A stretch of 64,000 nucleotides of DNA from Macrostomum lignano (GCA_002269645.1 NIVC01002342.1:7559-71558), one strand, 5' to 3'. Positions 38,567 to 59,100 are shown, counted from the first letter of the stretch. The notes: generated by a model not told the origin, from the letters alone. Made by a program: numbers and translations.

Positions 38567-41500
38567 TCACTGAATGTTGCAGACTTTGCTCCTGTTCTTC
38601 TTCAGTGACACCTGGCTGGCAGTCAGCGCCTCCGCCTCCGCCTTCTCGTCTGCCACTGCTCGTCCACCGCTGCTCCGCTGGCGCGGCTGCGGCGTCTTCA
38701 TTGTTGGCGCACCGCCGGTTTCGTTGGCCGCGGCCGCCGCCTCGAGCTGGCCGATGGCTACAGAAGTTCTGTGCCGCTGCAGCCTCCGCTTCGCTTCATC
38801 ACCGGTGTCTTTTTTGCTTGCCACGTGCTTCTTTGATGCTATGTACTTTTCCTGCTCCTCCAGGTACTTCATGTACTTTTTAACCGACTCGTTATACTGC
38901 GTATTGCCGAGCTTCAAAGCGTCCAGCTCCTTGTGCAGCAGATCGCGCAGGAGGGCTTCGCCGGCGGAGAAGAGATTCTCCTGCGCGCCGGAGCCCGACG
39001 CCTCGTCGTCTGGCAACACCGTCACCCGGCCGTTGCCGGCTCTCTGGTGCTCCAGGCACAGCCACAGCAGCTTGCCGCTGCCCAGCGCACACTTGGACAG
39101 CCCGGAGTGGCGCTGCTCGCCCTCTGGAACATGCACACGGAAGACCGGATGAGACTCAGACAAAATTTCGAGCTGAGCGGCATTACAGGAGATCAATCAA
39201 ACCTATGATCTATCAGTCAAATAAAAGTTCGAACATGGTCTGTATTTATGGATTGCTATTGTGGCCTGCTAAGGAAGAGTAGGAACTCTCTGAAACCGAA
39301 TGCCCTGGGCTATTGCGCGTTCGAATCTCAGTTCTGGACACAGAACTAGAAGCTGAAATTTATGTTCAGTGACGAAAACCGTTGACTGTCATCGAGTTCT
39401 ATATTCATGGTTGCGCATGAACTTGCGACCAAGTAACGCATAGAAATGCATTCACGGAGCACTGAGTTTAAAAAAACCAGCAAACGGACTTTGAGCAATC
39501 GACACCCGCCCCACTCACTGGTGGCATCCGTGTACAGCTGCTGCACCGTTCGGTAGGCGTCGATGAACGACTTCGGCGACACCGCAGCCTCCACACGGAC
39601 TGCCTGCAGGAACTCCTCGGCTTGGATTCCCTCGAGGCAGTTCAACCGAATGCCGCTGGCCTGCAGCAGCGAGCAGATCCTTAGCAGGTACACGGAGGCG
39701 GCGGACAGCAGGTTTTCCCGGCCCGTCTTGCTGGTGGTCGCGAGGCTCACGGCCGGTCCGTGGGCGTGCCAGCCCTGTAGTGTTTCAAGGGATACATTGC
39801 GTTTTGGAAACCAAACCTATCATGCATTTCGACACTATAATCAATCTATTCTTAATGAGTGGAGACATTGAGAAGCATAAGTGTGAAGCGCGATGATGTT
39901 AAAACATTCCAAGCCATGGATCGGAAGTTGTCCCGGTGTCCCTCAAAGCCCTGCTAAGAACCGCTTGCGCTTCAATCTGCCATACCATGCAACTCACCCG
40001 CTGATTCTCGCAAAACACTCTGATCAGCACCTGTGGATTTGCGGTGGAAGGAAAAGCTGTATAAAATTCAATCAATGGATCACACTGCACATTACTGCAA
40101 TTTTGGTAGGGTTCGTAGGTAAACCAACCAATTCTTCCAGCTTGCCGCCGTCTGAATCCTTGCTCCGGCTCTCGTCACTGAAGTCGGTGACGTCGCTGAA
40201 GTCCGGCACAAGCAGCCGCGGCAGGTCGCTGTGGCTGAACTGCTTGAGAAACCGGCGCTGCGCAAGCTCGGCCTCCTCTCGAAACAGGCCGGGCTGGCTT
40301 GGCAACGGCATAGCAACGGTGGTCTTTCGTTTCATCAACGGCACGTTTGCCGATCTTTTTTCGGCCTCTTTGGCCAGCAGACTTTTGATTCCGGCAACCA
40401 GTCTTTTAAATTCCAAAGCCGGAACATCCTTGCGAAAGTCGAACTCCTCGTAGCCCAGGCTGAGCATGCCCAGCTCTTGGGTCTTAAAGGCCTGCGTCTG
40501 GCCCACCACGACAGTCACAATCGGCTTGCGCAGGTTCTTTGCCGCGAAGCGAAACTCCATCATGCAGTTGGCGCTGCGCTGGTACTCGTCGCTGACAAAA
40601 GCCAGGACTAGCGGGCACCGGCCGAGGCCCGAGCTGATGTCCTCGAATAGGCTGCGCTGCAAGTGAAACCGGACAGGGAGAGCTTCGTGTCTATCTGCTC
40701 CATTTTTACTGTTCTAACAAATTCCCACAACATGCCTTTTAAAGACTGACACGATAACTACTAACAGCCCTATAATCTAAGGATTGATATCAGAGATACA
40801 ATGAGCTTTAATGAATGTGTGAATGCTCTTCTTCACGTTACACGTCGAGATCTTGAGATGTTTACGAGCATTGGAGATAAAATACCATCACTTCAAAGCT
40901 TTACTGACACATTCATCGATTTATAGTGTAATTAATATCTGCGAAACCTACGGTTCCAGTGTCCTTGACGTCGAGCCAGCATCGAATCCCCTCTGCTTCC
41001 AATCTCTCCCTGAGCCGACGCGGGTCACTGTCCTCGCAGCCAAGAGCTCCGTTTCGGGTTCCCTTCGCCACGGCGTCGTGAGAATTTGCCCAGCAGTAGG
41101 AAACAAAGACGTCCTTGTCGCGAGAGTCATCGTCACTGGGTTTTTGATTGGATGTTTCAACCGCAGCCGAGACGTCCTTGATGACCTCTGCGAGCTGCCC
41201 TTCGTAGACTGACTTTTTGGCTTCCGTCAGATCAATATACTTGTCTGTACCGACGAGGAAGGCGAGCTCGGTGCAGTCCCGCCACGACTTGTCCGCCCCA
41301 ACGCTGAGGTAGACGAGCTTCTTGCGCAGGTTGTTCTTGGCGCTGAACAGCGAGTTCAGGCAGGCCTTGTCTGAGCCGAAGGACTTTGTGAGGAACACGA
41401 GCACAGCGCTACAGTCGCTCATGTGCAGCTGCTTGTCCTCCTGCTGCTCGGGGTACGGCGGGTAGCTGAAAAGTGAACAGCATCTGGGATAAGCAAGGTG

Positions 41501-44500
41501 AACAGAAGCGAGGTGCACCAGAGTATTCCGCAATGGCTTACCAGCTGAGCCCTTCTGCCTCCAGCTTCTTGGCCACAGCCTCAGGGCAAGTTGGTCCTCT
41601 GTCCTTGCCGTCTTTCGGAAAATCATCCGCAAGAAACAGCAGACACACATCTCTGCTCATCTCCAGTCGAGCTCTGCGAAGCCGCAGCAGACTCTGTTCA
41701 AGCTGATGGTCGAACTCCGTCAGACTTTCTGGGCGGATGCTTGCGAGCAGCTGGCTCAGGTTTAGGATGTGAAACTCGAACGGGCACTGCAGGAATGACA
41801 CCTGACGGCTGCTGGCCTTGCGAATCATGGCAACTCGGATGACGCTGCGCTCACTGTCACCCGATGAGGAGTTCAGGCACTCGGGACAGGGCAGAATCTC
41901 TTCATAGTGGACGCCGTGGAACGTCTCCTTGATGAGACTGTCGAACACGTCGTTAATCATGAAGAGTACGTTCTCGGGCCTCGGTCCGAACACAGTCGCG
42001 ATCAGGCGCTGTCTCTCGTCCATGGTGATGACGGCGATGTGGGCGTCCTTTCGGAGCAGCGAGCCGCGCTTCCAGATGGTGTTGCTGTCGGTGAACTCGA
42101 ACAGCCGGACCTGAGCCCGGTTGAACAGCCCGGCTGGTAGGTAGTCGAACTGGTAGATGAACCTCGCCAGCGTGTTGCCCTCGCCGTCCGCCTCTTGCGG
42201 GAACGAGTACTGCGCGAAGGTGTTCGAATTAAATCGCTAATTCACAATGGATCTCGGTTTTCCTGCATGAACTATGGGCAATGGCTTCAGTCTAGTTGTT
42301 TGAGCAAAGCACCTGCACCAGCCGACGTAGCGGAAGCGCCGTGGCCAAGGGCGTACTGTGACACTGACAGACTGTTTTGTGACAGACTTGTAGGCCCAGA
42401 GTCTCAGCCCCAGACCGCAGTTGCCTGCCCCTCCTACCTGTTTCTTGAGCGCGTGTGCGCAAGAACTCACTAGTTTTTGTTCAAGATAGATAGATGGATA
42501 GAGACACAAAACACAAGCTCGTCAGAATCAAAAGTACCTCCGGCACGTCCTCTGGAAGCAAGCAGGGCACGATGTTGCAGTCCTCCTTCATCGCGTACGT
42601 TAAGTCGAAGGCCTCTGTAAGCTTCAGCAGCCACTCGTGAAGTGCTGGATCGAACTTGCTCCAGATCGCTGGAATGTCGGATCTTTTCAGCTGGCCGTTC
42701 TGCAGTTTGATGGGTTGTTAAAGTTCGGCTCAGGTTCATGCCATGCTGATAATGTACAAGCTACTGTGACGGAGAAGCTCACCTGAATGGGCGAGTTCTT
42801 CACGCTGACAACGCACGCCATGACATCCACAATCCACTTCGGGTTGATGACCACTTTGTGTCTGAGGTAGTCCGTGTCGAAGTACTGCACCGAGCCGATG
42901 TCGTTCAGAAAGCTGACCGCTTGCCTCACGTGCTTGTCCTCGTAGAGGCCCTGCGACTGGGCCAGGTCGGCCACTTCCTGCCAGTCCAGAATTTTCACGT
43001 GGTCCCGGGTTCGTTTCTCGATCAGGCGGTCTTCAAAGTCCAGGAAGATCCGCGGCAGCCGCTCGCTCATGTACGGCTGCTGGAGGGCGACCTGAACCAG
43101 CTGCTTGCGGAGGTCGCCGATGCCCATGCCTGCGGTGGTGGGGAATGCGGTGTTCTGCTTAGGAGGGGAAGCCACCTGGGCAGAAAGACTTGCTGTAACT
43201 GCTTACCGCTGTGCGATGAAATGATGTGAAATCCGCAGATCTGAGGATATCGCGATTTGAACGTCTCCATGGGAATCTTGTCCGGTTTCTCCACCTGAAA
43301 CAGTATATTTGTAACCTCCATTGTAGGCACAGTAAGGTGTTAGGTGACTTAAAGCACTTCTCACCTGATCAGCATGGGTTCCCACCACCAGAATCGGAGC
43401 GTTCGGTGCGTGGCTGGCGATGGAGCTGAGCCAGAAGTTCAGGCCGGCGTGCTCGTAGCCAGTCCTCACTGTGTACAGCAGCAGGTAGACAGCCCTGTGT
43501 GTGAGGAAGAACTGGTGGGTGTTGTAGTACACCCGCTGTCCAGCAAAGTCCCACGTGCTGAAGTGCAGCGGCGGACTGCCGTCGCCGATGTCGATTTGCC
43601 AGTCGCCAATGTCGATGCCGTCGGTGATCTCCTCGGCACCGATGACGCTGGTGGTCCCGGTGGGACTGCGCAGGGCGCGCAGCAAGCTGGTCTTCCCAAC
43701 TCCGCCTGGAAGCGGTAAGAAGCTGATTAACTATGCACACTGTTCTGACCGGGTACCACATGCTCCGGCCAGGAGAGACCCGGAAACTTACCCAGTCCGA
43801 CAAACATCAGCTTTGTTCTCTTGCACTCCACTTGGTCGGAAGCGAGAAATTTGAGGTAGCTGAGCATAGCGCTCGAGCCCCTCTTGGCAACCTCCACAGG
43901 CGGAGTCTGCAGAGACGGGCACCTGGACACGTCCACGTGACTCAGTTGTGGCAGCTCAGACAGACAGGGCGACAGGGACTTCAGCCTCGGATTGTGATCG
44001 AGGACCAGCCTTTGCAGCTTTTTCAAGCTTTTTATCTTGTCAGGAACTTGATGGATTGCCTGCAGTGAGATGTGACGCTTGTGCACTCCAATGGCCACTG
44101 ATAAAGTTTATCTAAAAAAAAACAGTTTCAAAGGAGTATTTAAGAAGCCACATATCCCGCTTACCTGATGCGAAAGTCGCAGCTCCCTGAGGTTGGTCAG
44201 CTCGAACAGGCAGGGCGGGATCCCGCCGGTGTCATCATCGTCCACGCTCTCCAGCCCCATGCGCGGCACGTCAGTCAGCATGTAGTGAAGGCCGCGGCAG
44301 TCCGCGATCCGTTTGGCTTGCTCCTCGGTGATGAGCAGGCTGAAGAACTGCTGCTCAGGCGGCACGGGCTCCAGGCCCGCCAGTGTAACGCCAGGGTTGC
44401 GCAGGTAAGTCGCATCCAAAGGCGATGCTGTTCCCGCGCCGCTGTCGTGCTCATCCATCTGGTCCGCCACTCTGTCAGGCCAAGCAATCCCGTCGATGAC

Positions 44501-47500
44501 GAGCTCCTGCAGCGAGCGCAGGTTGGAGAACTCCTTCGGCAGAGTGCGGATCGGCAGCTGCAGGAGGTGCAGCATGGTTAGTCTGTCTAGCTGTCCGATG
44601 GATGCTGGAAGGGCAGTGATGAGGCACCTGTCAAGCGTCAGAGACTCGAGCTTGGTGCTGCAGGTGTTTGGCAGCTGTGAGACCTTCGCGATGCTGATGG
44701 TGAGGCTCTGCAGATTAGGAGCGTTGCAGTCAATGGACAGCAGGTCGGACTGGGTTATCGTGAGGCTTCGCAGGCGCTGCATCGGCCAGCTTTTGTCCAG
44801 ACTCTGCATCTTCTCCATCCTGTGCAGATGGAGAGTCTCTAATCCGGTGAGGCCCGTCAGGCAGGAGGCGCTGCTGATGAGGCGCGAGCTGATGAGGGCC
44901 GAGCGGACGCAGCTGCCGAAAGTGGCCAGAGTGGCCGCCACAGCCGCTTCTCCCTCGCCTGCAGCTGCGGAGCCGACCAGCTCGTCAATGAGGGTCGGGC
45001 TGCCGGCAGCCAGCTGGTGAGCCCTGCACACGGGCTGCAGGTCCTGGCCCTGCTGCTGCTGCGCCTGCAGAACCAGCGGCCCGCCAGGGGGCTGAGTGAA
45101 CTCCGCAGTCAGGCGCTTCTTGAGGTCTTCGAGTCCATCGGGCTGCTCAGCGGCTGATGCGGCGAAGAGGCTGCGCCAGTGCGAGAGGGCGGCTCCGAGC
45201 AACAGCAGCCGCTTCACGACAGCCTCCGCAACTGAGCGGCAATGGCCGGGGCCGGTGAGCAGCTCGTGGCATGGCAGCATCAGCTGAGGGTGGGGGTGGG
45301 GTGGCAGCATCAGCTGAGGGTGGGGGTGGGGTGGCAGCATCAGCTGAGGATGGGTGGGGTGGCAGCATCAGCTGATGGTGGGTGGAGCGGCAGCATCAGC
45401 TGAGGATGGGTGGGGTGGCAGCATCAGCTGATGGTGGGTGGAGCGGCAGCATCAGCTGATGGTGGGTGGGGTGGCAGCATCAGCTGAGGATGGGTGGGGT
45501 GGCAGCATCAGCTGAGGATGGGTGGGGTGGCAGCATCAGCTGAGGATGGGTGGGGTGGCAGCATCAGCTGAGGATGGGTGGGGTGGCAGCATCAGCTGAT
45601 GGTGGGTGGAGCGGCAGCATCAGCTGATGGTGGGTGGGGTGGCAGCATCAGCTGAGGATGGGTGGGGTGGCAGCATCAGCTGAGGATGGGTGGGGTGGCA
45701 GCATCAGCTGATGGTGGGTGGAGCGGCAGCATCAGCTGAGGATGGGTGGGGTGGCAGCATCAGCTGAGGATGGGTGGGGTGGCAGCATCAGCTGATGGTG
45801 GGTGGGGTGGCAGCATCAGCTGAGGATGGGTGGGGTGGCAGCATCAGCTGATGGTGGGTGGGGTGGCAGCATCAGCTGAGGATGGGTGGGGTGGCAGCAT
45901 CAGCTGATGGTGGGTGGGGTGGCAGCATCAGCTGATGGTGGGTGGAGCGGCAGCATCAGCTGGTATTCAGCCCCTTACCCTGTGCTGCATCAAAGCCCTG
46001 ACGGCAGCCTGTGCTGTCAGGTGGCAGTCCAGAGCTGATGGCAGTGGGTGCTTCACTCCGGCAGAGTCCACCAGGTGCACGTCCGTCACGGAACCTGCGT
46101 GTTGGTTAAGCAGGGAGTCAATGATTTAGTGAAAATGGTCCCAGTGAGGAACTCAGACGGAATCCACTGAGCACGGTGTTTACTAACCGCTGTTGCACAG
46201 CAGGTGCGCTTTCAGTTTGCCAGAATCTGCTACATCCAGGATGCTGGGCTGGCACAACAGGCGGCCCTCTTCGCTGGTGAGTTCGGGCAGGAAAACCCAC
46301 AGGAAGCCGTGGCCAACGCCGGCCTTCTTCGCCAGAGACGCCAGCACACTGCGGCCGAAGCCGGCGGGCCCTCGGAAGCCGACGCAGCGGCAGGGCTGGC
46401 CGTAGAGGATGGAGTCGTCCGTCAGGTCGCTGGTCTGATTCCAGCGGGGCAGGACGTTCGGGCTGGGGAAATTGGGTATCGGTAGCGCCGGATCGCTGAT
46501 CGTTGAGGCTGAAGTGGTGCGTGAGTTAAGCAGGCCGTTAGCGCAGCTGTCCACCTGCAGCGGAGTATTTCTAATGCTATTTCTAATGCTATTTCTAATG
46601 CTATTTCTAATGCTATTTCTAATGCTATTTCTAATGCTATTTCTAATGCTATTTCTAATGCTATTTCTAATGCTATTTCTAATGCTATTTCTAATGCTAT
46701 TTCTAATGCTATTTCTAGTGCTATTTCTAATGCTATTTCTAATGCTATTTCTAATGCTACGCGCTTACAGCTGAAGTTCGCTCTGTCTAGCCGGTCGGGA
46801 GCTCTGAAGCTGCCAGCACTGATGTCAACCGTCACTGCAGCCAGTGCGGCGTCTGCCGGTTGCAGAGTAACCGACTTGGAGTCGGCCTTGACGACCCTGC
46901 CGAGTTCGCCGCCGGGTTTTCTGGACTTCCCGGCTTCGAGTCGCAGCCAGTCGCCAGGGCTGAGCTCTCTCGAGTAGTTCACGGCCTGGAGTTGGAGCGG
47001 TCTGTGAGTTTCACTGCGCCGAGGAAAACTGAAGATATTCATTAAAACCCACCGGGAAATTCGAAGCGCTGACGCAGACGGCGGCACCCGCCGAAGCGTT
47101 GAAAACCCAGCCGTAGTTTCTGCGCGGCACGAGCACCTTTCGGACGGTGACTCCATTCTCCAGCACCTCCAACAGGTCGCACGAGCCGCCCAGCTTCCTT
47201 CTGTTCTCCTCCCTGTCCTGAAGAGCCACGAGAGGTGCCGAGTTGTGCCGCGACATCTCCGGCTGCAGATCGAAGGTCAGCCGCTTCTCCTGGTGCCCCG
47301 CCGACTTGTTGTCCAGCGAGATCTCCAGACTGCACTCTTTGCGCAAGAATTCCGAAAACTCCAGCGACTGAGCGTCGGGACTCGAATCCGGGTCTTTGCT
47401 GCTCTCTTTTGGGTACAAAATGAGCACGTTGAGAATCACGATTCTCTCCTGATCTTTGGGCGACAATGCGAAGTATGCCGTCCGCTTCTGGTCCTGCTCG

Positions 47501-50500
47501 CCGCCGGACAGTGCGGCACCCGGGTCCACCGTTGCAGAATTGCAGATAACGTGACGGGATGAAGTCACCTGGAATTCCGTGAGCTCGTACAGATTACTGC
47601 GGAAGGTGAACAGTGCCTCAATAATTGTTTTCATAACGGTTTCTCACCTTCAACTCCGTCTGCCCGGGGGCCAGCAGCTGCAGAGCGACTACAGCTGAGA
47701 AGCTGGGCTGCATCTCGGTTTTCTCCTTCAGGCAGAGCAGGCGGCTGTCTTCGGGGAAAATCTTCGCAACAGCGGTTGTGTCGGCAGGGTCATCCAGGAA
47801 GTCTTCCGTCACACCGACCGGGAGCTGCTCAGCGTAGGTCGCTGGCAGCCAGGGAATTCGGTTGGTCAGCCGCACAGCCTCCCTGGGCGACTGCATAGTA
47901 ACGCAGGGGAACAGCCCCGTGGGCGGGACGTCCACCGGCTCGCTGACGTGGCAGTCCTCGAACGAGCCGCTGCCCCGCTGGTCCACCGAGAACAGGACCC
48001 GCGCCCGGCTGGGGCCCACGAAACGCAGCTGGCAGCGCACGTGGCAGCCCGGGGCCGCTTCGGTGCCGGAGAACTGGAACTTCGGGTCCGGCTCTGCCGC
48101 TCCGCCAGCTGTGAGCAGTCTGCGGTTTGTGTCAAGATGGCGTGGATATTTTGCATTTGCAATGCATTGGCTTTGAGTCCGGCTCAGCTTCAACTGAGTT
48201 GTCTTAGTCTAGCACCATCAATCAGGTGTCTCTCACCTGCCGTCCACGCCGCTGTAGCCAACAGAGCCAGGCAGCGTGCCGGGCTGGGCCATCACGGGAA
48301 AGTCGGCCGGCACGACTCCAATGGAAATATTTCCTTTAACGCCCTTGTTCTCAATGCCTGCAATGGAGTCACTTACAGTTAAGCGACGTACGCCAGTGGT
48401 TCTCGTTTCGATTGAGTTTTGCAGTCTGGCAACTTACAAATCTCAAACGAACTGCTGCTCCTGGTCAGGCGTCTCTCCCCGATCAGGGTGGCCACGGGAA
48501 CGAATATGTTGGAGGCGGCCAGCCCAGCAGATTCCTGCAGCGTGTTGAACCAGTAGAACGCGACGCCCGTCTCCTGCCACACCGAGCAGAAGGACCTCAG
48601 AGCGAAGCTGAACCTGCGGTCCACGCCGAGTGCGCCGTCCATCACATCGTCAACGGGCTGGAAGGCCAACCAGTGGGGATCCCAATCACCATTTATCGGC
48701 AAGAGCTAAAACAGCAAGCCGCGCTCACATTAACAGCGGACAGCCGGAAGGTGACAGTAATCGGCTCCTCCAGCAGCACCTGGCTTGTGGAGAAAACCGC
48801 ATCTGCGGGCACGGTGCAGCAGACGCATATTCAGGCTTCGAAATATCATTATAAAAAAGTTTTCATTTTCTCACCTGTCTGGCTTTCGGATAGCTTTGGA
48901 TAAACCTCCAAGTACCTCGGCGTATGCTTTCTAAAATAGCAGAAGCGAGCAGAGGTCATCGAGTCAAGTTCTGCTTCATCTTCCTAAACCCCAAAAAGTT
49001 TTCGTATTCTGATGACTCTCTGATCAGTTTTGATTCGTGACTGATTGTTGCCAAGAAGCCATTCTGAAGCACCAACGCTTCGAAAAACTTTTCAATGAGA
49101 CTTTTCTAACTATACAGCCCAAAAAGATTGGTCGTCAACTCACTCCCAAAGCAGGACACTGAGCTGCGGCTGCTGGGAACCACTGGGGCTGATGCTGAAG
49201 CTGACCTCAGGCGCCAGCACCGACTGCAGCGGGGCGCTGGGGCAGAGCCGCACGCACCGGCTGCTGTCCGCGATGTCGCCATCGTCGATGTAGCCCGGCA
49301 GGACACGGCTGGGACGCACGTCGCTGCCAACCGCCCAGAGCCGCGCGGCGCAGCGGCCGCAGACGCCGCAGGAGTCACAGCTGGCGCCGCCGAGGGCGCC
49401 GCAGAGGCAGCGGCCGGGAGTGCCGGAGTCGATCCGGTTGAAGGCGCAGTCGGAGCCGCCGACCGAGCAGCTGCCGCACAGCGAGCAGACCGACTGCTGC
49501 GGCTCGCCGTCCAGCTGCTGCGGCTCCCAGCAGTGCTCGCTGTGGACGGAGCAGTTCTCTGCTCAGGCGGGGAACGGCGGTTGCGCTGACCAGTTTGTTA
49601 CCGGGTAGTTCGAGAGGGTGGCTTCTTGGGCGACAGGAGACCCGCAGCGCAGGAAAGTCAGGGAAAATCAATGATAGTGCGCTTTTGTACTAATCCGTGC
49701 GCGTGCTCAGGGACCAGGGAAGCGACCATAACTGCTGGCCTTCTCTCTGCCTGTGGGTCAACTGTTGCCTCAGAACTAGCTCAGGGCATGCACACGGATG
49801 CGCATCTTACGTGAATCGGACAAGCCCATAAAAAATTTTGATTCATGAGCCTCAAAGTAAATGAAGACAGGCGTTCACGCGTGTGTAAGCATGCAATCAT
49901 CCATGGACTCAGAATTTCCACTGCATGCAAACAACCATGGACTCAGAATTCCTTGAAATCCTCCCAAAACCCCGGCGCAGTCCCGCTGCCTACCCGGTTC
50001 GCCATTCGATGGCGCAGTCTCCGCGATGACGCCGTGCCTCATCATGAGGCAGTCAGCGCAGTCCGTGAACAGGTGCAGTGCGGACCACAGCATCCGCTGA
50101 GTGGCCTCAGCCGCTCCACCAGAGCTTGCTCCAGCAGGCTGGTAGGCAGTCAGCCTCAGCAGCCGCTCCTCATCGTCAAAGTGCACCGCCACCTCCGCTC
50201 CCCACAGACACCTGACAAAGCCGCGGGCAGACAGGCAGCAGAGGGAGCCGAGATGCGACGTCAGCGAGCTGAGGGCCGGCAGGATTCGGTCCGCACTCAG
50301 GTTGATGCCGCGGTACCAGCGGTGGACGGCCGCGAGACCCAGGCCTTCGGCGTCCTTGGCGGACTTAACGGGCCAGTCCAGCTGCCTGGCGTTGGCACAG
50401 AACATGTTGGTGTAGAACAGCTTGGCATCGGCAGGCGACTCTCGAATTGGAAGCACCTCTAGCAGGGCTCCGGAGTCCTTGAATATGCTGATGAGGTGGT

Positions 50501-53500
50501 CCATCTGCAATGATGATTAAGCAGGTGGTTGAGCATGTGATTGAGCTAATTGATTGAGCAAGTGGTGAGCAAGTGATTGAGCAGGTGATTAAGCAGGTGG
50601 TTGAGCATGTGATTGAGCAGGTGATTGAGCAGGTGATTGAGCAGGTGATTAAGCAGGTGGTTGAGCATGTGATTGAGCAAGTGGTGAGCAAGTGGTGAGC
50701 AAGTGATTGAGCAAGTGATTGAGCAGGTGATTGAGCAGGTGATTGAGCAGGTGATTGAGCTAATTGATTGAGCAAGTGGTTGAGCCAGTGATTGAGCAAG
50801 TTATTGAGCAGGTGATTGAGCAAGTGATTGAGCAAGTGATTGAGCAGGTGATTGAGCAGGTGATTGAGCAGGTGATTGAGCAGGTGATTGAGCAGGTGAT
50901 TGAGCAAGTGATGAGCAAGTGATTGAGCAAGTGATTGAGCAGGTGATTGAGCAGGTGATTGAGCAGGTGATTGAGCAAGTGGTTCAGCCAGCGATTGAGC
51001 AGCTGATTGAGCTAATTATTTGAGCAAGTGATTGAGCTAATTATTTGAGCAAGTGATTGAGCTAATTATTTGAGCAAGTGATTGAGCAAGTGATTGAGCA
51101 GGTGATTGAGCAAGTGATTGAGCAAGTTGTGAGCAAGTGATTGAGATAATTATTTGAGCAAGTGATTGAGCAAGTGGTTGAGCAAGTGATTGGGCTAGTT
51201 ATTTGAGTAAGTAATTGAGCAGCTGATTGAGCTAGTTATTTGAGCTGGTGACTGAGTAAGTGGTTGAGTAGATGATCTGCTCACCTCCTGCACGGACAAG
51301 CCGGCCTGCTGCAGCGACTTGTCCAGCTCCAGCTGGCTCCACACTCCGGCCCCGGGGCTCAGTCCGGGCAGCAGCGGCCCGGCAACCAGGGGCGGCTCAA
51401 ATGGCAGCGACTCCAGCAGGGTGAAAAACCATGGCGGGTCGGTTACCACGATGCGGAGGCGCTTCAGATAGATGATGATGCCCTGAAAAATTGAATATGC
51501 GCTTATTGTTCGTGTAGTGCCGAGAATTTTTGCATCACAAGCTGAGGCGACTCACCCTCTGGTGCAGCCAGTCCAAATCGTGAGTCAAGAAGGTCCGGTC
51601 GATCTCCGTGTTGCCCGCCAGCTGGTCCACGGAAACCAGCCGGCCGCCAGCCTCCTTGCTCGCCAACTTTCGGCACGCAGCGACGACGACTTCTGTGGTC
51701 GCCGCGTGCGCTGAGGCCGCAGGCGCCAGCGCGGAGAAGGCGGCAACCGCAGTCTCTATGAGAGCCTGGCGCAGGTCTCGAAGTCCGCCCTCGCCCCCTC
51801 CACCGTCGGCTTCGGCGTCGAAGATGTCCAGCTCTTGGTCGAAGCGAGTCCGCAGGAACCGCTGCACTCGTTCCGCTGCCACCAGCGACTCCGCTGCGCG
51901 CCGCTCCGCTTCGAAGCCCTGCGTCACCGAAGCCGACTCTGCTGCAGCCAGAGATGCTGCTTCCAGCGCTGCCGCGTTGGCCTTCATGGCATCTTGGACG
52001 GCCGAGCGAAGCCGGTCAGCGCCTCCTCGCTGATGGTCGATTTTGCGGCAAAGGATGCGAAATCGCGTCCGATGCGCACCCTCGTCGCTGACTTCCACGT
52101 CTCCTGTCATCTTCAGCTGGTCCAGGTGCTTCTTAATGTCCTCGTTGGTCAGCGCCTTGTCGATCTGGCAGAAGCCCATCTTCTCGGACACGTCCGCGGC
52201 GGCCCAGGAGACGAAGCCGTGCGTCAACTCGGACACATCGCCGAACAGAGCGCTCGTTCGGACTTGAAAGTCTTGAAGCAAGTCTTGGTTAACGAAAATG
52301 CTGACGTGGCAGGCGTCCTTGCTGTCGATCGGGTCCGAGATTTCCACGGCGAATTGGAACTCTCCGGCGGCTGCGATGGGGATGCTCTGGGTCTTCGTCC
52401 TGCCGCCATCGGGCCTGGCGTAGCTGCAGGTCAGCGTGCTGCGGATGGGGAAAAGCAACTGACTGCAAGCCTGCATAATTTGCAACAAAGTTAATTCGCA
52501 CCGGCTGCTTACTATTGATTCGGATTTTTGCTGCTGAAGAGCAGCAGAACTCCCGCTGACTGCTCGAGCTGCTCCTGCAGCTGCGCCAGCTGAGGATTGT
52601 CAAAGAATTTTGCCGAAATTTTCCCAATCCCAGCGCTGAAGGAAGAGCGGCTCGCGCTCTGCACTGAGAAGCCGCACAGGGGAGTCTGCTTCAGCGGCTG
52701 CCGGCTCAGAAAGGCGCCGCCTCGGTTTAGCAGGGGTAGCCTGGAATAGGAAGGCTTGGGATGGTCAAGTCACTGCACCCACTGACACCCAGCCCTGCTC
52801 CACCTACACCCAGCCCTGCTCCACTTACACCCAGCCCTGCTCCACTTACACCCAGCCCTGCTCCACTTACACCCAGCCCTGCTCCACTTACACCCAGCCC
52901 TGCTCCACTTACACCCAGCCCTGCTCCACTTACACCCAGCCCTGCTCCACTTACACCCAGCCCTGCTCCACTTACACCCAGCCCTGCTCCACTTACACCC
53001 AGCCCTGCTCCACTTACACCCAGCCCTGCTCCACTTACACCCAGCCTGCTCCACTTACACCCAGCCCTGCTCCACTTACACCCAGCCCTGCTCCACTTAC
53101 ACCCAGCCTGCTCCACTTACACCCAGCCCTGCTCCACTTACACCCAGCCCTGCTCCACTTACAGCCAGCCTGCTCCACTTACACCCAGCCCTGCTCCACT
53201 CCCAGCCCTGCTCCATTCACCAGCATCTCCACTTACACAGCTGCTCCACACACCGCCTGGACTTACACCCAGCTGCTCCACTTTTCTTTGTAATTAAGTT
53301 CAATTTCGAGGCGGTCTTCAGCTGCACTGGCGCCTCTCGACTGACAACAGGAATGGCGGCGGCGGGCTGCTGCAGGACCAGGCGCGGCTCGGTCCTCTTA
53401 CCTGAGCACTGGGTTCTCCTATGAGTAGTGGATGTGGGATTTCAGTTGCAATCTTTCTCAGTGCTTATCAGTTGGCTCAAGAACTCACGTACTCAAGAAC

Positions 53501-55382
53501 TCACCCGAGACACGAAGTTGGTCAGACAGGCGGTCACGTGGGCGACGGCGCTGTCAAAATCGTTTTCCACGGCGATCACAACCTGATCCGGCTGGCCGGT
53601 GAAGAACTGCGTGTTGTAGGCCTGCGCGCGGGGTTGCGAAGGGGCTGTGAAATTTCATGCACTTTTGATGCTGCAGACAGACAGCAGAACTGATGCTGAA
53701 ATCCCGCTGATCTGGCCTATTTCGGGCTCTCCAAGGGGACAAACAAAGAAGCGGGGGATTTAAATGAGCTTGCAACCTTTCAAATGGAGACGGTGACAGA
53801 GTAAGCTCACGTGAAATCCCAATTCTTTCATGTTTATCCGCTCTGGGATTCATATGTTGGGCATCCTTGTTAAAATAATGAAACGTTTTTTTTCAAGCCA
53901 TTTTTTGGAGTTGATAAAACGCAGGATTACGCTCACCGACAGGCACAGCTCAACCGCAGCCACTTTGAGCAGCCCGCCGGCCTCCATAAATTGCGAGTCC
54001 GCTGCCGTTCCCCGCACAGCCGGCCTGAGGCGGCACTCCTTCACGGTGCGCAGCGGGCTGTACTGCAGGTCCGGCGGCGTCAGGAACAGCAGGCTGGACA
54101 CTGACAGAGCGGCGGACAGATCCGGCTGCAGCTCGGCCGGGCTGTCCGGAATGCCGGACAGCAGATCGCTGCGAACTGTCGATTTGGAGCCGAATGTGTT
54201 GAGCAGCAGATGGACGGAGTTAGCAGTGAGTCCGGGGCACTGGCGGATGTCCGCATCCACCGTCAGGGTCTGCAACTCAAAGCAATTGAAGGCAGCTGGT
54301 TTCTTTGCCATTCCGTGACTGATGCCTGCACCCATCGCTCTCACCTTAGCCACTGCTCACTCACTGCTGCCTGCACCCATCGCTCTCACCTTAGCCACTG
54401 CTCACTGACTGATGCCTGCACCCATCGCTCTCACCTTAGCCACTGCTCACTGACTGATGCCTGCACCCATCGCTCTCACCTTAGCCACTGCTCACTGACT
54501 GATGCCTGCACCCATCGCTCTCACCTTAGCCTCTGCTCACTGACTGATGCCTGCACCCATCGCTCTCACCTTAGCCACTACTCACTGACTGATGCCTGCA
54601 CCCATCGCTCTCACCTTAGCCCGATTCGCATCTCCGCCCTTGAGAGCCTCGCAGAGCCAGCGAATTCCCTCGTCTGTGATGTGACTTTCGCCCCTGAACG
54701 ATAGGCGAAAGCGATCGGCTGCAGCCTTCTCGGCCTTCATAGCCTGCAATGAATTGGGGTTACAGCAACAGCTAAGAATTGTTTGCTGAATTTTGCATAA
54801 GTTTTGCTTGTCAAATTTAAAATATTTATGAGAATCTGCCTACCAGCGCCGCAGAAAGGTGCTTGAGGGTGAGGTCGGTCAGCAGGCTGGACCAAACCGG
54901 CATTATTTCGCTCCTCGGAGCGGCTCCGTCCGAGCTGAAAAACACCGTGGAGTCTTCGACCGCAATGTTTTCTAACTTTCTCTGCAAAGTTTAAGTGTTT
55001 CAAGAGAGAAATTTAACAAATATTTTGTACATTTGGGGAACTCCAAGAAAATTCTGGATCGTAGCGTTCTCGGGGCGATCATCCATCTTACCGCCAGCAA
55101 GCCGTCTCTCAGTCTGAACCGTTCGAACACGTCAGCCACGACCTCCGACTTGGCGGCCTTTCGCAGCGGCTCAACCGACCCGGTTGGCGATTCAAACCTG
55201 GGCGAACGCTGCGGCGAAGCCTCCACTGAACGCAGCTCCTGCTCATTCAAAATGTCGTCATCATCGCTCCCAAACAGGCCGCCATATTTATCCTCAACTC
55301 CGAAAGATGACATGCTGTAGGCTGGGCTCCCCGCTCTGTCGCTTGGCAATCGTTTTAATGGCCTGCGGGGTTGTGATACTTT

Positions 55383-55437
<55 letters not shown>

Positions 55438-55574
55438 AGTGGCGGTGGCGGCTGCTGCTTCTGTTGCTGCTGAATCTCAGGCAGCGGTGGAGGCTTCTGT
55501 AGCAGCTGCGGCGGAGCCTGCTTTGATACCTGACTCCTGGCAGGCGCCTTTTTGGAAAGGAAATTTTTATCCAT
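38567..55574 (-). CDS. Giant Roco-family protein (about 32 exons, about 3,500 aa): polyQ, LRR-like, degenerate Roc/COR, Cys-rich, SPRY, LRR, Roc, COR, TIR, TIR, CaaX-like end
   Basis: Phase-consistent exons: 55092-55574, 54844-54981, 54615-54743, 53937-54269, 53505-53621, (uncertain exon about 53260-53410), 52513-52740, 51556-52462, 51285-51482, 49994-50504, 49144-49558, 48875-48930, 48729-48802, 48438-48705, 48237-48357, 47648-48119, 47053-47568, 46769-46985, 46188-46508, 45979-46094, 44165-45283, 43792-44059, 43365-43705, 43207-43294, 42783-43129, 42538-42699, 41542-42209, 40952-41465, about 40130-40656, (about 39998-40030, uncertain), about 39485-39775, 38567-39172. Confidence 0.85.
40300..41660 (-). 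other. Tandem TIR-like domains of the Roco gene
   Basis: TIR1: DVCLLF..KKLEAEGLSC..CSAVLVFLTKSF..KACLNSL. TIR2: DVFVSYCW..RLEAEGIRCWLD..LFEDI..VLAFVSDEYQRSANCMMEFRFA. Confidence 0.88.
41700..43129 (-). other. COR domain of the Roco gene
   Basis: RLPRIFLDFE..AVSFLNDIGSVQYF..VVINPKWIV..LTEAFDL..VPCLLP..YQFDYLPAGLFNR..IWKRG..CPEC. Confidence 0.9.
43207..43830 (-). other. Intact Roc GTPase domain of the Roco gene
   Basis: G1 FVGLG|GVGKTS, G2 ITDGIDI, G3 WDFAGQ, YYNTHQFFL, G4 VGTHAD, G5 IISS. Confidence 0.93.
43792..44830 (-). other. Leucine-rich repeats upstream of Roc
   Basis: LTGLETLHL, LESLTLDRCLITALPASIGQLDRLTML, LTNLRELRLSHQ, LKKLQRLVLDHNPRLKSLS. Confidence 0.92.
45284..45965. repeat. 28-30-bp intronic minisatellite containing the splice acceptor
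   Basis: Minus-strand unit ...CCTCAG|CTGATGCTGCC duplicates the acceptor of exon 44165-45283. Confidence 0.93.
46566..46759. repeat. 12-bp intronic minisatellite (ATTTCTAATGCT)n
   Basis: About 16 copies fill intron 46509-46768. Confidence 0.95.
47800..48705 (-). other. SPRY (B30.2-like) domain
   Basis: FEI|CIENKGVKGNISIGVVPADFPVMAQPGTLPGSVGYSGVDG ... VLFSVD ... GLFPCVTMQSPREAVRL. Confidence 0.8.
50516..51270. repeat. 12-bp intronic minisatellite (GTGATTGAGCAR)n
   Basis: Fills intron 50505-51284. Confidence 0.95.
52781..53280. repeat. 21-bp intronic minisatellite (CACCCAGCCCTGCTCCACTTA)n
   Basis: Minus-strand unit carries GGGT|GTAAGT. Confidence 0.93.
54316..54620. repeat. 45-bp intronic minisatellite containing the splice donor, 7 copies
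   Basis: GCTAAG|GTGAGAG recurs every 45 bp (plus-strand TCACCTTAGC at 54341, 54386, 54431, 54476, 54521, 54566, 54611). Confidence 0.95.
55382..55438 (-). repeat. (CAG)n encoding a polyQ tract of about 17 residues in Roco exon 1
   Basis: Uninterrupted GCT run on the plus strand. Confidence 0.9.
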
Positions 55575-57453: not shown

Positions 57454-59100
57454 ACCTTTAGGTCATCGCAAGTGGTTGAATTGAAGACACTCCTGAGCAT
57501 GTGTGTTGCATGCTAGGCCTGAGTCTTCCTGTCAGAGACAATGGTGTCAGGGCTCAAGACAAGGGAGCCAAGGTAGCGGAAGTCCTTGCACACCTTGACA
57601 ACTTCTCCATTTAGAAAGCTAGTGCAGGGATAATTGCAATGCCCACGTGGAGTACATCAGTCTTAGATACATTGATCACCAAGCCAACTTAGGTGCCCTC
57701 TTGTAGAGTCTAAACAGCCCATTGGGCAGCAGCTGGATTGCAGCATAGAAGAGCAATGTCATCAGCATAGGCAAGAGCAAGCAGTAAGATAACAGGATAT
57801 TGGAGCTTTGGCATGAGATTAGCACATAGCCATCATCTTCATGCAGGCATTGGCGAAGAACATAGTCTACCACAACAATGAATAGTAGTGGAGCCAGTGT
57901 GTCACCCTGAAGGATGCCAGAAGTTGTGCTAAATTCTTTAATGGGGCCATTGCTCAACTGAACAAATGCTCTTGAATTACTGTACAAGTCCATCATAGCA
58001 GCTACAGGTTCAGAAGGAATGCCATAGTAGGACAGAATCCATAGAAGTGTAGGTCTGTCAACTAAGTTGAATGCTTTGTGGAAGTTGACAAAATCAATTG
58101 AGATGAAACACTGGTGCATCTTATAGGCTTCAATGATGTAGTGGATGGTTGCAACCTGCTCAGTTATAGACCTGCCTGGTCTGAAACCACTTTGCCAGCT
58201 AAGAAGCAGCAGATTTAGCCCAGGCAGAAGGCAGTTGCGCAGCACTGCATTAAGTAGCTAGGCCGCAGTATATTCTAGTGCTATGCTATGCTTATTGTCC
58301 AGGCTAGTATAGGTGCCCTTCTTTGGAATAGAAACTATCTTAGAAATGTGCCACAGAGCAGGGGCGTGGGCTTTGGCGTTGCCTCCAAGAACACAGTGCT
58401 TGTTAAGCAAGCTGGTAATTGCTAGAGTCAGTTCTGAAAGCTTTAAGACCCTTGGGGGTAGAGGTCGGATAGGATTGAAATCTTCGGGCGGGATTGGGAT
58501 CGGGAATAATTTTTTTCTCGGGATTGGGATCGGGATTCGGGAATCGGGATCAGGTCTTTTAGTGTATTGTCCATGTAAAGTTAAACAAAATTGAGAAAAG
58601 ATTGTCAAGATCAAGAAGTAAAACACAACGAAATTGATATGAAGTTTTGTAACCAACAAAGTAAATAATGTAACGAGTACAAGTTAAAGCAAAATACTTT
58701 CAAGTAATCACTAATTCTATAAATTATTAATCGAAAGACCTGTTCCCGAATCTCGAGTTTTTCAGGGTCGGGATTCTGGTCCCGCGGGAATTCAATTTTC
58801 CTCGGGATCCCGAGATTTCGGGATCGGGATCGGGATCCCGTCCAACCTCTACTTGGGGGTATCAAGTCAACACTGGCAGCAGCATTTGCTCGCATGGTCT
58901 TTAGAGCTTGGCTGACCTTGTCCACCATAATAGGACTAGTGTTGAAGGCACTGGTGTCTGCTGGTCTAAAGTTTGGTATTGAAAGCAGTGGTAGTGATGA
59001 GGCAGGGCATTGAGCATATTGTGGTAATGTTAGCCAATAGGGCCTTTTGGTGCTCAATGGAGTCTGCTCCAACAACTATGCTGGGCCTTGGCTTTCTCTC
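57454..59100 (-). mobile_element. Decayed RTE-like non-LTR retrotransposon, 5' RT part (inverted relative to its own 3' part)
   Basis: DLIP|PRVLK, ISKIVSIPKKG, QSGFRPGRS, FHKAFNLVDR, GILQGDTLAPLLF, GLVINVSKT, DFRYLGS; contains stops and frameshifts. Confidence 0.88.
58459..58851. mobile_element. hAT-type MITE (393 bp) inserted in the RTE RT
   Basis: TIRs TAGAGGTCGGA / TCCAACCTCTA with CGGGAT subterminal repeats; 8-bp TSD CTTGGGGG at 58451-58458 and 58852-58859. Confidence 0.93.

What the first reader, a model, noticed from the sequence alone, without database searches (positions are those of the whole stretch)
40300..41660. Tandem TIR pair: one without and one with the catalytic glutamate
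Seen: TIR2 has SANCMMEFRFA, with Glu at the CxxE position; TIR1 has DKACLNSLFSA, with Ser there. Established: SARM1, plant and bacterial TIRs need this Glu for NAD+ cleavage and are activated by self-association. Inference: an LRR-sensing, GTP-switched NADase in which TIR1 is a scaffold or inhibitor, i.e. a candidate invertebrate immune or cell-death switch built on Roc-COR rather than NACHT/NB-ARC.
Basis: partly seen in the sequence, partly recalled or inferred. Interest (0 to 1): 0.72.

Follow-up and report, generated by a model that had tools for sequence, protein, structure and literature searches.

The report
ROCO GTPase with paired TIR domains
This flatworm gene encodes a large cytosolic GTP-switch (ROCO) protein ending in two TIR domains, one that has lost the NAD-cleaving glutamate and one that always keeps it, and the same uncharacterised design is conserved from single-celled relatives of animals to amphioxus, so it is a good but unproven candidate for an ancient immune or cell-death enzyme switch.

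Summary
On the minus strand of a Macrostomum lignano window, a 12+ exon gene (about 50.1 to 38.6 kb) encodes Cys-rich/SPRY-like N-terminus, LRR, Roc, COR-A, COR-B, TIR1, TIR2 and a conserved Cys/His C-terminal domain with no match in Pfam or the PDB.

TIR1 (41657..41150) has Ser where TIR2 (41116..40360) has the Glu of S-x-N-C-x-x-E. Profile-profile alignment puts one on the other (98.9%, E 2e-17).

Across representatives from molluscs, an annelid, a nemertean, amphioxus and protists, TIR2 keeps the Glu in 123/123. TIR1 is mostly hydrophobic there, with 0/18 Glu in large animal proteins. An apusomonad homologue keeps Glu in both copies.

- The architecture is real and the Roc GTP-binding motifs are intact.
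- NADase activity is not shown.
- TIR2 has Asn, not the usual Trp, four residues before the Glu.
- Non-enzymatic TLR2 has a Glu at the same column.

The concept is not new. LRR-Roc-COR-TIR proteins were predicted as bacterial conflict systems and noted in Aplysia. What is new is the conserved dead/live TIR pair, the C-terminal domain and the pre-animal age. I rate it a new variant of a known kind, of moderate interest.

The parts
38567..50093 (-). Whole gene as far as it can be traced: at least 12 exons from the LRR region to the stop codon, plus N-terminal exons mapped from the 98%-identical database protein P0005. The true 5' end is uncertain.
   Evidence: Exon model with GT..AG at every junction and an unbroken frame to TGA; tblastn of P0005 onto the window.
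49149..49559 (-). N-terminal Cys-rich exon (CxxC-rich), conserved with bivalve and nemertean orthologues.
   Evidence: tblastn of P0065, P0073 and P0076 onto the window, E 1e-10 to 1e-13; no Pfam match.
47645..48394 (-). SPRY-like region. It is weak in this copy and clear in orthologues.
   Evidence: tblastn hits of the paralogue P0006 (residues 55-183) and P0065 (933-1049) at 48355-47843. Those stretches carry the SPRY domain: weak in P0006 (E 0.006), 72 bits in P0065.
43792..44860 (-). Leucine-rich repeats, in two exons (intron 44164..44060).
   Evidence: Pfam LRR_8, LRR_4 and LRR_14; exon model.
43207..43813 (-). Roc GTPase domain, with P-loop GLGGVGKTS (split by intron 43791..43706), DFAGQ (43553..43536) and THAD (within 43385..43365).
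   Evidence: Pfam Roc 54 bits; motifs read from the spliced translation. The public model P0005 mis-splices the P-loop.
41679..43129 (-). COR-A and COR-B domains (exons 43129..42783, 42699..42538, 42209..).
   Evidence: Pfam COR-A 57 bits and COR-B 44 bits.
41150..41657 (-). TIR1, a diverged TIR without the catalytic Glu. It has Ser, codon TCG at 41353..41351. Intron 41541..41466.
   Evidence: hhalign to the TIR2 profile, 98.9%; Pfam TIR_2 only 18.2 bits; AF2 beta-alpha fold; coordinates.
40360..41116 (-). TIR2, a TIR_2 domain with the invariant Glu (codon GAG at 40557..40555) in S-A-N-C-M-M-E-F. Intron 40951..40657.
   Evidence: Pfam TIR_2 52.6 bits; PDB profile alignments; Glu in 123/123 family members; coordinates.
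39040..40284 (-). Conserved C-terminal domain with no database match: ELAQRRFL...PRLLVPD...[acidic linker]...FCENQRGWH...YLLR...KCALGSGKLLWLCLEH. It spans exons 40656..40096, 40030..39998, 39774..39519 and 39123...
   Evidence: Found in 31 of 74 family members with more than 150 aa after TIR2. Invariant C, E, W, H, Y, W, L, C. AF2 pLDDT 80, pTM 0.73. No Pfam, PDB-sequence or Foldseek match.
38567..39039 (-). Low-complexity, charged C-terminal tail and the stop codon (TGA at 38569..38567).
   Evidence: Translation.

Best explanation
The gene encodes a cytosolic ROCO-family switch protein. Variable N-terminal recognition modules (here Cys-rich and SPRY-like, then LRR) sit in front of a Roc GTPase and a COR dimerisation unit. 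These control a C-terminal output made of a catalytically dead TIR (TIR1), a Glu-bearing TIR (TIR2) and a conserved Cys/His domain.

The most likely mechanism has three steps. Ligand or stress sensing by the N-terminus and LRR changes the nucleotide state and conformation of Roc-COR. That rearranges or brings together the TIR pairs of a dimer or higher oligomer. TIR2 then becomes an active NAD(P)+ or nucleotide-processing enzyme that uses its invariant Glu. TIR1 serves as its built-in non-catalytic partner, either supplying the neighbouring surface an active TIR site needs or holding TIR2 off until activation. This would be an intramolecular version of Glu-less sensor TIRs paired with signalling-competent TIRs in plants.

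Shown here: the gene structure, the domain order, intact GTP-binding motifs, homology of TIR1 and TIR2, the Ser/Glu difference, and their conservation pattern.

Inferred: catalysis, the substrate, oligomerisation, the role of TIR1, and any role in immunity or cell death.
For: - Domain order and splicing.
- Roc motifs GLGGVGKTS, DFAGQ, THAD.
- TIR1 is a duplicate of TIR2, with Ser aligned on Glu.
- Internal control: within the same proteins the TIR1 copy tolerates L/V/I/M/S at this column (57/75 hydrophobic; 0/18 Glu in animal proteins over 1500 aa), while TIR2 keeps Glu in 123/123 representatives. Sampled members come from protists to amphioxus. This points to selection on chemistry rather than on the fold.
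- Thecamonas LRR-Roc-COR-TIR-TIR keeps Glu in both copies, so the loss in TIR1 is derived.
- The best PDB sequence matches of the TIR2 profile are enzymatic TIRs: Cat1 9e-9, plant RPPT-TIR 3e-4, RPP1 8e-4, AbTir 2e-3. In the printed alignments (Cat1, RPPT, RPP1, 7uxr) the Glu sits on that protein's W-x-x-x-E Glu. I take that to be the catalytic residue from my own knowledge.
- Foldseek ranks plant NADase TIRs and TIR-1/SARM1 above MyD88 and TLR1.
- Flatworms have no TLRs (PMC8609888), so a TLR-adaptor role is unlikely in this species.
- There is no TM-like segment.
- Bacterial LRR-Roc-COR proteins carry TIR in the effector position (P0023 and P0034; PMC8195603).
Against: - No enzymatic evidence exists for any member of this family.
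- TIR2 has Asn, not Trp, at Glu-4 in 112/123 members. Cat1, the plant TIRs and 7uxr have Trp there in the printed alignments.
- TLR2, a scaffolding TIR, has both Trp and Glu in these columns, so the Glu is not diagnostic.
- The margin between enzymatic and scaffolding TIRs is small in both sequence and fold searches. TLR1/6 score 4e-3 and MyD88 5e-3, while SARM1 scores only 0.2.
- The AF2 inter-domain geometry is uncertain (pTM 0.53), so no TIR1-TIR2 interface can be claimed.
- The function of the C-terminal domain is unknown.
Confidence: 0.5

Rival explanations
1. TIR2 is a non-enzymatic assembly (scaffolding) TIR, as in TLRs and MyD88. The ROCO switch would nucleate a TIR-TIR signalling complex that recruits other TIR adaptors or kinases. 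The Glu is kept for a polar contact in that assembly, not for catalysis, and TIR1 is a second assembly surface.
For: - TLR2 has Glu (and Trp at -4) in the same columns and is a scaffold.
- TLR4 and MyD88 lack NADase activity (PMC7282519).
- TIR2 lacks the Trp at Glu-4.
- MyD88 and TLR1/6 are within about ten-fold of the plant and bacterial TIRs in profile E-value.
- Authors of the Aplysia survey read the gastropod relatives as part of a 'novel GTPase TLR signalling cascade' (PMC9334734).
Against: - Glu is invariant in 123/123 TIR2 copies, while the sister TIR1 copy freely replaces it with hydrophobic residues.
- MyD88 itself has Gln at this column.
- M. lignano has no TLRs (PMC8609888).
- The same architecture occurs in the apusomonad Thecamonas. 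That organisms outside animals lack TLR/MyD88 pathways is my own knowledge, not tested here.
- The top sequence and fold matches are enzymatic TIRs.
Confidence: 0.3
2. TIR2 is an enzyme, but not a plain NAD+ depleter. It would make a small-molecule signal (a cADPR isomer or another ADPR-derived nucleotide) or act on nucleic acids. The conserved C-terminal Cys/His domain, or a separate protein, would read that signal.
For: - The atypical active-site neighbourhood, Asn instead of Trp at Glu-4, is conserved in 112/123.
- A 20-25 residue insertion with invariant N-S...A...D-P-R lies between the first strand and first helix of TIR2.
- The C-terminal domain co-occurs with the TIR pair in 31 family members.
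- The closest solved relative by sequence is Cat1, a CRISPR-associated TIR.
Against: Nothing here distinguishes products or substrates. The C-terminal domain has no detectable similarity to any nucleotide-binding fold, and it is missing from the remaining family members with long tails.
Confidence: 0.12
3. The locus is a decaying or mis-assembled copy, and the tandem TIR is an annotation artefact with no function in this genome.
For: - The gene sits next to about 20 kb of satellite DNA and has tandem repeats inside introns.
- The public model P0005 is mis-spliced in the P-loop.
- M. lignano carries many duplicated genes (my own knowledge).
Against: - All 12 modelled exons are open, with canonical GT..AG sites and an intact P-loop.
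- A 98%-identical protein and a 59% paralogue keep the same architecture.
- Every conserved family residue checked is present.
Confidence: 0.03

Closest known systems
Molluscan LRR-ROC-COR-TIR proteins described as 'putative TLRs with ROCO domains' in Aplysia californica (PMC9334734)
   Same: The core architecture LRR, Roc, COR, TIR. One Aplysia gene carries MBT repeats, like the Batillaria, Pecten and amphioxus members found here. By architecture they appear to belong to the same family as the window's gene, but no Aplysia sequence was retrieved here.
   Different: Those proteins were only listed from InterProScan output and called TLRs. The tandem dead/live TIR pair, the invariant Glu, the C-terminal domain and a cytosolic, non-TLR nature were not described in the passages read. 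The window's protein has no TM-like segment and belongs to the SPRY-type rather than the MBT-type subfamily.
Prokaryotic LRR-AP-GTPase(Roc)-COR conflict systems with variable C-terminal effectors, including TIR (Kaur et al. 2021, PMC8195603)
   Same: The logic is the same: rapidly evolving LRRs, a Roc-COR switch and an effector slot that can hold a TIR. Bacterial examples with TIR_2 were recovered here (P0023 and P0034).
   Different: The two bacterial sequences read here show a single C-terminal TIR, of a different subtype that lacks the S-x-N-C-x-x-E motif. They have no pseudo-TIR partner, no Cys/His C-terminal domain, and no SPRY, MBT or PLAT modules. Their function is also only predicted.
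SARM1 / TIR-1 (ARM-SAM-SAM-TIR NADase)
   Same: An animal cytosolic protein whose C-terminal TIR needs the equivalent Glu and oligomerisation for NAD+ cleavage (PMC7282519). It is a structural neighbour of the model.
   Different: There are no ARM or SAM domains here. The regulator would be a GTPase rather than an NMN/NAD+-binding ARM domain. SARM1 is only a weak sequence match to the TIR2 profile (E 0.2). TIR2 has Asn, not Trp, at Glu-4.
Plant TIR-NLR pairs such as RPS4/RRS1, and TNL resistosomes (RPP1, ROQ1)
   Same: A nucleotide-switch receptor with LRRs drives TIR enzymes. Glu-less TIRs act as partners of Glu-bearing ones (PMC7282519). Plant TIRs are the best fold matches.
   Different: The switch is Roc-COR, not NB-ARC. 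The TIRs are C-terminal rather than N-terminal. The dead and live TIRs are fused in one chain instead of sitting in two paired genes.
MFHAS1/MASL1 and LRRK1/2 (animal ROCO proteins)
   Same: The LRR-Roc-COR core. The amphioxus member is annotated 'MFHAS1', and UniRef names the flatworm protein a 'serine/threonine protein kinase' by transfer from LRRK.
   Different: No kinase domain is detected, so the kinase name is wrong. That MFHAS1 and the LRRKs have no TIR domains is my own knowledge.

Membership tests
TIR domain superfamily (TIR2) | Match to a curated TIR profile above its cut-off | tested here: met
   Pfam TIR_2 52.6 bits against a cut-off of 28, E 8e-14.
TIR domain superfamily (TIR2 and TIR1) | Flavodoxin-like beta-alpha fold that matches solved TIR domains | tested here: met
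   The AF2 model has pLDDT 79.6, with five strand/helix units in each half. Foldseek top hits are RPP1, SNC1, RPS4, RUN1, TIR-1/SARM1, Hydra TRR-2, MyD88 and TLR1. The output does not say which half was aligned.
TIR domain superfamily (TIR1) | Match to a curated TIR profile above its cut-off | tested here: not met
   Pfam TIR_2 18.2 bits against a cut-off of 28, and no PDB sequence hit. Homology is instead established through TIR2: hhalign 98.9%, E 2e-17.
NAD+-cleaving (enzymatic) TIR domains | Glutamate in the alpha-C helix at the catalytic column | tested here: met
   For TIR2, the Glu (codon 40557..40555) is aligned to the W-x-x-x-E Glu of Cat1, RPPT-TIR, RPP1 and 7uxr, and is present in 123/123 family members. 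For TIR1 the feature is not met: it has Ser.
NAD+-cleaving (enzymatic) TIR domains | Aromatic Trp four residues before the Glu (W-x-x-x-E), as seen in Cat1, the plant TIRs and 7uxr in the alignments | tested here: not met
   TIR2 has Asn (S-A-N-C-M-M-E). Asn occurs in 112/123 family members and Trp in none. Whether this Trp is strictly required is my recollection, not tested here.
NAD+-cleaving (enzymatic) TIR domains | Glu-dependent NAD+ consumption on self-association | not testable with these tools
   This needs biochemistry. TLR2 shows that the Glu alone is not sufficient evidence (PMC7282519).
ROCO proteins | Roc GTPase immediately followed by a COR domain | tested here: met
   Pfam Roc 54 bits, COR-A 57 bits, COR-B 44 bits, in that order.
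ROCO proteins | Intact GTP-binding motifs (P-loop GxxxxGK[ST], DxxGQ, [NT][KH]xD) | tested here: met
   GLGGVGKTS, DFAGQ and THAD are read in the spliced translation. The P-loop appears only with the corrected splice, which matches the paralogue and the gastropods.
LRRK-type protein kinases (the name given by UniRef) | Protein kinase domain | tested here: not met
   There is no kinase family in the Pfam scans of the exons, nor in the precomputed Pfam list of P0005.
Toll-like receptors (the name used for gastropod relatives) | Single transmembrane helix between ectodomain LRRs and a cytoplasmic TIR | tested here: not met
   No 19-residue window reaches Kyte-Doolittle 1.6 or more in the window protein or in P0005. 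Roc-COR lies between the LRR and the TIRs. Signal peptide prediction was not run.
STAND NTPase immune receptors (NLR / TNL) | NACHT or NB-ARC domain | tested here: not met
   No such Pfam hit anywhere in the protein.
SARM1 family | ARM repeats plus tandem SAM domains before the TIR | tested here: not met
   There are no ARM or SAM hits, and SARM1 TIR reaches only E 0.2 against the TIR2 profile.

The most novel reading that the evidence does not exclude
The fused dead-TIR/live-TIR pair on a COR-dimerised ROCO scaffold would build a four-TIR platform with two active sites, functionally like the TIR layer of plant TNL resistosomes. Under this reading it is a GTP-gated TIR-enzyme receptor that predates animals. 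It is present in apusomonads, and appeared absent from vertebrates and ecdysozoans among the roughly 20 representatives whose source was looked up. Its output would be read or relayed by a previously undescribed Cys/His C-terminal domain. That would make it a third, independent class of nucleotide-switch TIR immune receptor, beside NB-ARC TNLs and SARM1.
Probability: 0.2. Interest if true: 0.8.

Novelty: new variant of a known kind. Interest (0 to 1): 0.55.

Why it matters
TIR domains that cleave NAD+ drive axon death (SARM1), plant immunity (TNLs) and bacterial anti-phage defence. In animals, though, SARM1 is essentially the only studied enzyme of this kind.

This family would add a second animal lineage of candidate TIR enzymes, under a different switch: a Roc-COR GTPase, the module mutated in LRRK2-linked Parkinson's disease. 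It also comes with a built-in pseudo-enzyme partner. That gives a natural system for asking how a non-catalytic TIR controls a catalytic one, and how a ROCO GTPase transmits its state to an output other than a kinase.

It would also bear on how flatworms, which lack TLRs, sense danger. Macrostomum lignano is a laboratory model in which gene knock-down is feasible (my own knowledge).

If TIR2 turns out to be a scaffold, the family still defines a conserved, unstudied ROCO signalling protein with a new C-terminal domain.

Tried and rejected
- Treating the bacterial-style ORFs as genes. Rejected: the locus is spliced, and the ORF starting 'MLPPHPHPQL' is read-through of a 28-bp intronic tandem repeat.
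- Word-indexed homologue searches with the tandem. They gave only 4 to 6 hits and wrongly suggested a tiny family. The exhaustive profile search found 163 representatives at E <= 1e-30.
I replaced them with exact substrings of P0005 and P0007. P0005 differs from the window by one residue (P to Q) in this region.
- Identifying the C-terminal domain. Pfam, a PDB profile search and Foldseek all gave nothing significant; the best Foldseek hit was FERM at E 0.5, probability 0.13. A zinc site is only suggested by the invariant Cys and His.
- PADLOC defence-system models gave no hit for TIR1, TIR2 or LRR-Roc-COR.
- Trying to separate enzyme from scaffold by nearest solved relatives. Enzymatic TIRs rank first, but the margins are too small to decide.
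- I considered whether the upstream 317-aa ORF (52488..51535) is part of the gene. It has no Pfam match and no similarity to family N-termini, so this is left open.
- The kinase (LRRK) and TLR labels were rejected (see the membership test).

Full report
WHAT IS THERE

The finding lies on the minus strand of a eukaryotic, intron-containing gene. Reading the DNA and joining exons at canonical GT..AG sites gives an unbroken frame of 1656 codons, from the LRR region to a TGA at 38569..38567.

A database protein 98% identical to this model identifies the organism as the free-living flatworm Macrostomum lignano (P0005). Mapping P0005 back onto the window places further N-terminal exons up to about 50.09 kb.

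The public model mis-splices the Roc P-loop. It reads KLMRSWEDQLAARPAQS. The splice chosen here restores KLMFVGLGGVGKTSLLRAL, which is what the paralogue P0006 and the gastropod orthologues have.

DOMAINS

Pfam finds LRR, Roc (54 bits), COR-A (57 bits), COR-B (44 bits) and then TIR_2 twice.

- The Roc motifs GLGGVGKTS, DFAGQ and THAD are intact.
- No kinase, NACHT, NB-ARC, ARM, SAM or death domain is detected.
- No transmembrane-like segment is present.
- The N-terminus has a Cys-rich exon (49559..49149) and a SPRY-like region (48394..47645). Both are conserved with bivalve and nemertean orthologues, in which SPRY is clear.
- Other subfamilies carry MBT or PLAT domains instead.

THE OBSERVATION

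TIR1 runs 41657..41150, with an intron at 41541..41466. TIR2 runs 41116..40360, with an intron at 40951..40657.

TIR2 reads SDEYQRSANCMMEFRFAAKNLRKP and TIR1 reads TKSFGSDKACLNSLFSAKNNLRKK. The two are visibly duplicates.

A profile of TIR1 sequences against a profile of TIR2 sequences gives 98.9% probability, E 2e-17, and places TIR1 Ser (TCG 41353..41351) on TIR2 Glu (GAG 40557..40555).

TIR2 passes Pfam's threshold at 52.6 bits. TIR1 does not, at 18.2 bits. AlphaFold gives both halves the TIR strand-helix order (pLDDT 79.6), but the orientation between the domains is uncertain (pTM 0.53). Foldseek returns TIR domains.

A 32-sequence TIR2 profile matches, in order, Cat1 (9e-9), plant RPPT-TIR, RPP1 and AbTir. 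In the alignments that were printed (Cat1, RPPT, RPP1 and the 7uxr 'TIR domain protein'), the Glu falls on the W-x-x-x-E Glu.

THE FAMILY

Word-indexed searches found few relatives. An exhaustive profile search of 1.84 billion representatives found 3808 hits, 163 of them at E <= 1e-30. Many are 2000 to 3300 aa proteins that match the whole tandem in one stretch.

Named members come from:
- scallops (Pecten, Ylistrum, Argopecten)
- abalone and other gastropods (Haliotis, Physella, Bulinus, Nucella, Batillaria, Lymnaea)
- the annelid Dimorphilus
- the nemertean Tubulanus
- amphioxus, where the protein is annotated 'MFHAS1'

Outside animals:
- The apusomonad Thecamonas trahens has LRR-Roc-COR-TIR-TIR.
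- Chytrid fungi have this TIR type together with SPRY.
- A choanoflagellate has it together with Tudor domains.

Within animals, the ctenophore Pleurobrachia has a multi-TIR protein.

CONSERVATION OF THE KEY COLUMN

In 123 TIR2-type domains the Glu is invariant, and the residue four positions before it is Asn in 112.

In 75 TIR1-type domains the column is L 25, V 14, I 11, M 7, Q 6, E 7, A 2, S 1, F 1, W 1. Three of the seven Glu cases are TIR2 domains re-hit by the TIR1 profile. None of the 18 animal proteins over 1500 aa has Glu in TIR1. The window's Ser is unique.

In Thecamonas both copies keep the Glu, so the loss in TIR1 is derived.

This gives an internal control. The fold tolerates hydrophobic residues at this position, yet TIR2 never changes it. 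That argues for selection on chemistry.

THE C-TERMINAL DOMAIN

After TIR2 and a linker comes a conserved domain with this consensus:

ELxQRKFLRQ...PRLxxxD...[acidic linker]...FxxLCExExGWH...PYLxR...RCxLPxGKxxWLCxxH

It is present in 31 of the 74 members with more than 150 aa after TIR2, including amphioxus and the nemertean. The AlphaFold model is fairly confident (pLDDT 80, pTM 0.73). Neither Pfam, nor PDB sequences, nor Foldseek give a significant match. The invariant Cys and His residues suggest a metal site, which is inference only.

MECHANISM

Best explanation (about 0.5): a cytosolic ROCO switch in which the N-terminal modules and LRR sense a ligand, Roc-COR changes state, and the TIR pairs are rearranged or clustered so that TIR2 becomes an active NAD(P)+ or nucleotide-processing enzyme. 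TIR1 acts as its non-catalytic partner.

This parallels plant TIRs that lack the Glu and act as partners of signalling-competent TIRs (PMC7282519). It also parallels the bacterial LRR-Roc-COR-effector systems in which TIR is one of the effectors (PMC8195603). Two bacterial examples, P0023 and P0034, were recovered here.

ROCO proteins are known to dimerise through COR (established knowledge). A dimer would therefore hold four TIRs, two of them catalytically competent. That step is inference.

CAVEATS

The Glu does not identify an enzyme.
- The TIR2 profile aligns without gaps to TLR2. Profile position 92 falls on chain residue 81, which is the Glu of SEWCKYEL.
- TLR4 and MyD88 have no NADase activity (PMC7282519).
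- MyD88 has Gln at this column.

TIR2 also lacks the Trp at Glu-4 that Cat1, the plant TIRs and 7uxr show in the alignments.

The main rival (about 0.3) is therefore a scaffolding TIR. Against that rival:
- Flatworms have no TLRs (PMC8609888).
- The same architecture occurs in an apusomonad, a lineage that to my knowledge has no TLR/MyD88 pathway.
- The Glu is invariant in TIR2 but not in TIR1.

COMPARISON WITH WHAT IS KNOWN

The protein itself is already in databases, uncharacterised and misnamed as a kinase. LRR-ROC-COR-TIR proteins were listed in Aplysia as 'putative TLRs' (PMC9334734). The Roc-COR-plus-TIR logic was predicted for bacteria. A search for papers linking ROCO and NADase found nothing relevant.

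What appears new is:
- the conserved dead/live TIR pair
- the S-x-N-C-x-x-E subtype of TIR
- the C-terminal domain
- the pre-animal age of the architecture

VERDICT

This is a new variant of a known kind, and its interest is moderate (0.55) until the enzymology is done.

Noticed in passing
window 17696-37791: About 20 kb of composite satellite. Arrays of a 19-bp unit (GACAGTCAGATCCGCCACA), a 56-bp unit, an AT-rich 48-bp unit and a 23-bp unit recur in the same order several times, which amounts to a higher-order repeat of roughly 7.3 kb. The block ends about 800 bp from the 3' end of the ROCO gene.
   Followed up: partly
window 5243-6348: A very homogeneous 17-bp tandem repeat (TTGGAGTGCCTGTCTTG), 65 copies at 98% identity.
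   Followed up: no
window 45272-45962: A 28-bp tandem repeat (24.5 copies) inside an intron of the ROCO gene. It creates the spurious open reading frame beginning MLPPHPHPQL, which runs into the LRR exon. Further intronic or intergenic repeats lie at 46566-46759, 50514-51268, 52779-53238 and 54316-54621.
   Followed up: partly
window 43686-43813 and 40096-40125: The public gene model for this protein (P0005, UniRef 'non-specific serine/threonine protein kinase') mis-splices the Roc P-loop, destroying GLGGVGKTS. It also uses an alternative donor that skips GLPTNPTKIA. It contains no kinase domain, so the name is wrong too.
   Followed up: yes
window 7014-8512, minus strand: Two adjacent ORFs match Pfam Phosphodiest, the type I phosphodiesterase / nucleotide pyrophosphatase (ENPP-like) family, at 260 and 45 bits. 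They are probably exons of one gene. Whether ENPP enzymes act on NAD-derived nucleotides is my recollection. The gene is about 30 kb away across satellite DNA, so a link to the TIR gene is unlikely.
   Followed up: no
window 57676-58245 and 60873-61913, minus strand: Fragments of an LTR-type retroelement: reverse transcriptase (RVT_1) and integrase (Integrase_H2C2 plus rve). The element was not assembled or examined further.
   Followed up: no
window 51535-52488, minus strand: A 317-aa open reading frame upstream of the mapped 5' end of the gene. It has no Pfam match and no similarity to the N-termini of family members. It could be an upstream exon, a separate gene or chance.
   Followed up: partly
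window 54972-55574, minus strand: A 200-aa ORF with a long poly-glutamine run and only weak, sub-threshold Pfam matches (TFIIA, E 0.002). It is probably an exon of a neighbouring gene.
   Followed up: no
family proteins P0132 and P0137 (Thecamonas trahens): The apusomonad LRR-Roc-COR-TIR-TIR proteins keep a Glu in both TIR copies (VSVEYFNDPAAVREYEYA and VSDAYAASDNCRMEFLHA in P0132; P0137 differs slightly). The dead TIR1 of animals is therefore a later degeneration of an originally double-Glu tandem.
   Followed up: partly
TIR2, window 41090-40990 (between the first strand and first helix): TIR2-type domains carry a 20-25 residue insertion after F-I-S-Y-C-W with invariant N-S, A and D-P-R residues. 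I have not seen this in other TIR families. It lies near where the substrate-binding loop of enzymatic TIRs would be.
   Followed up: no
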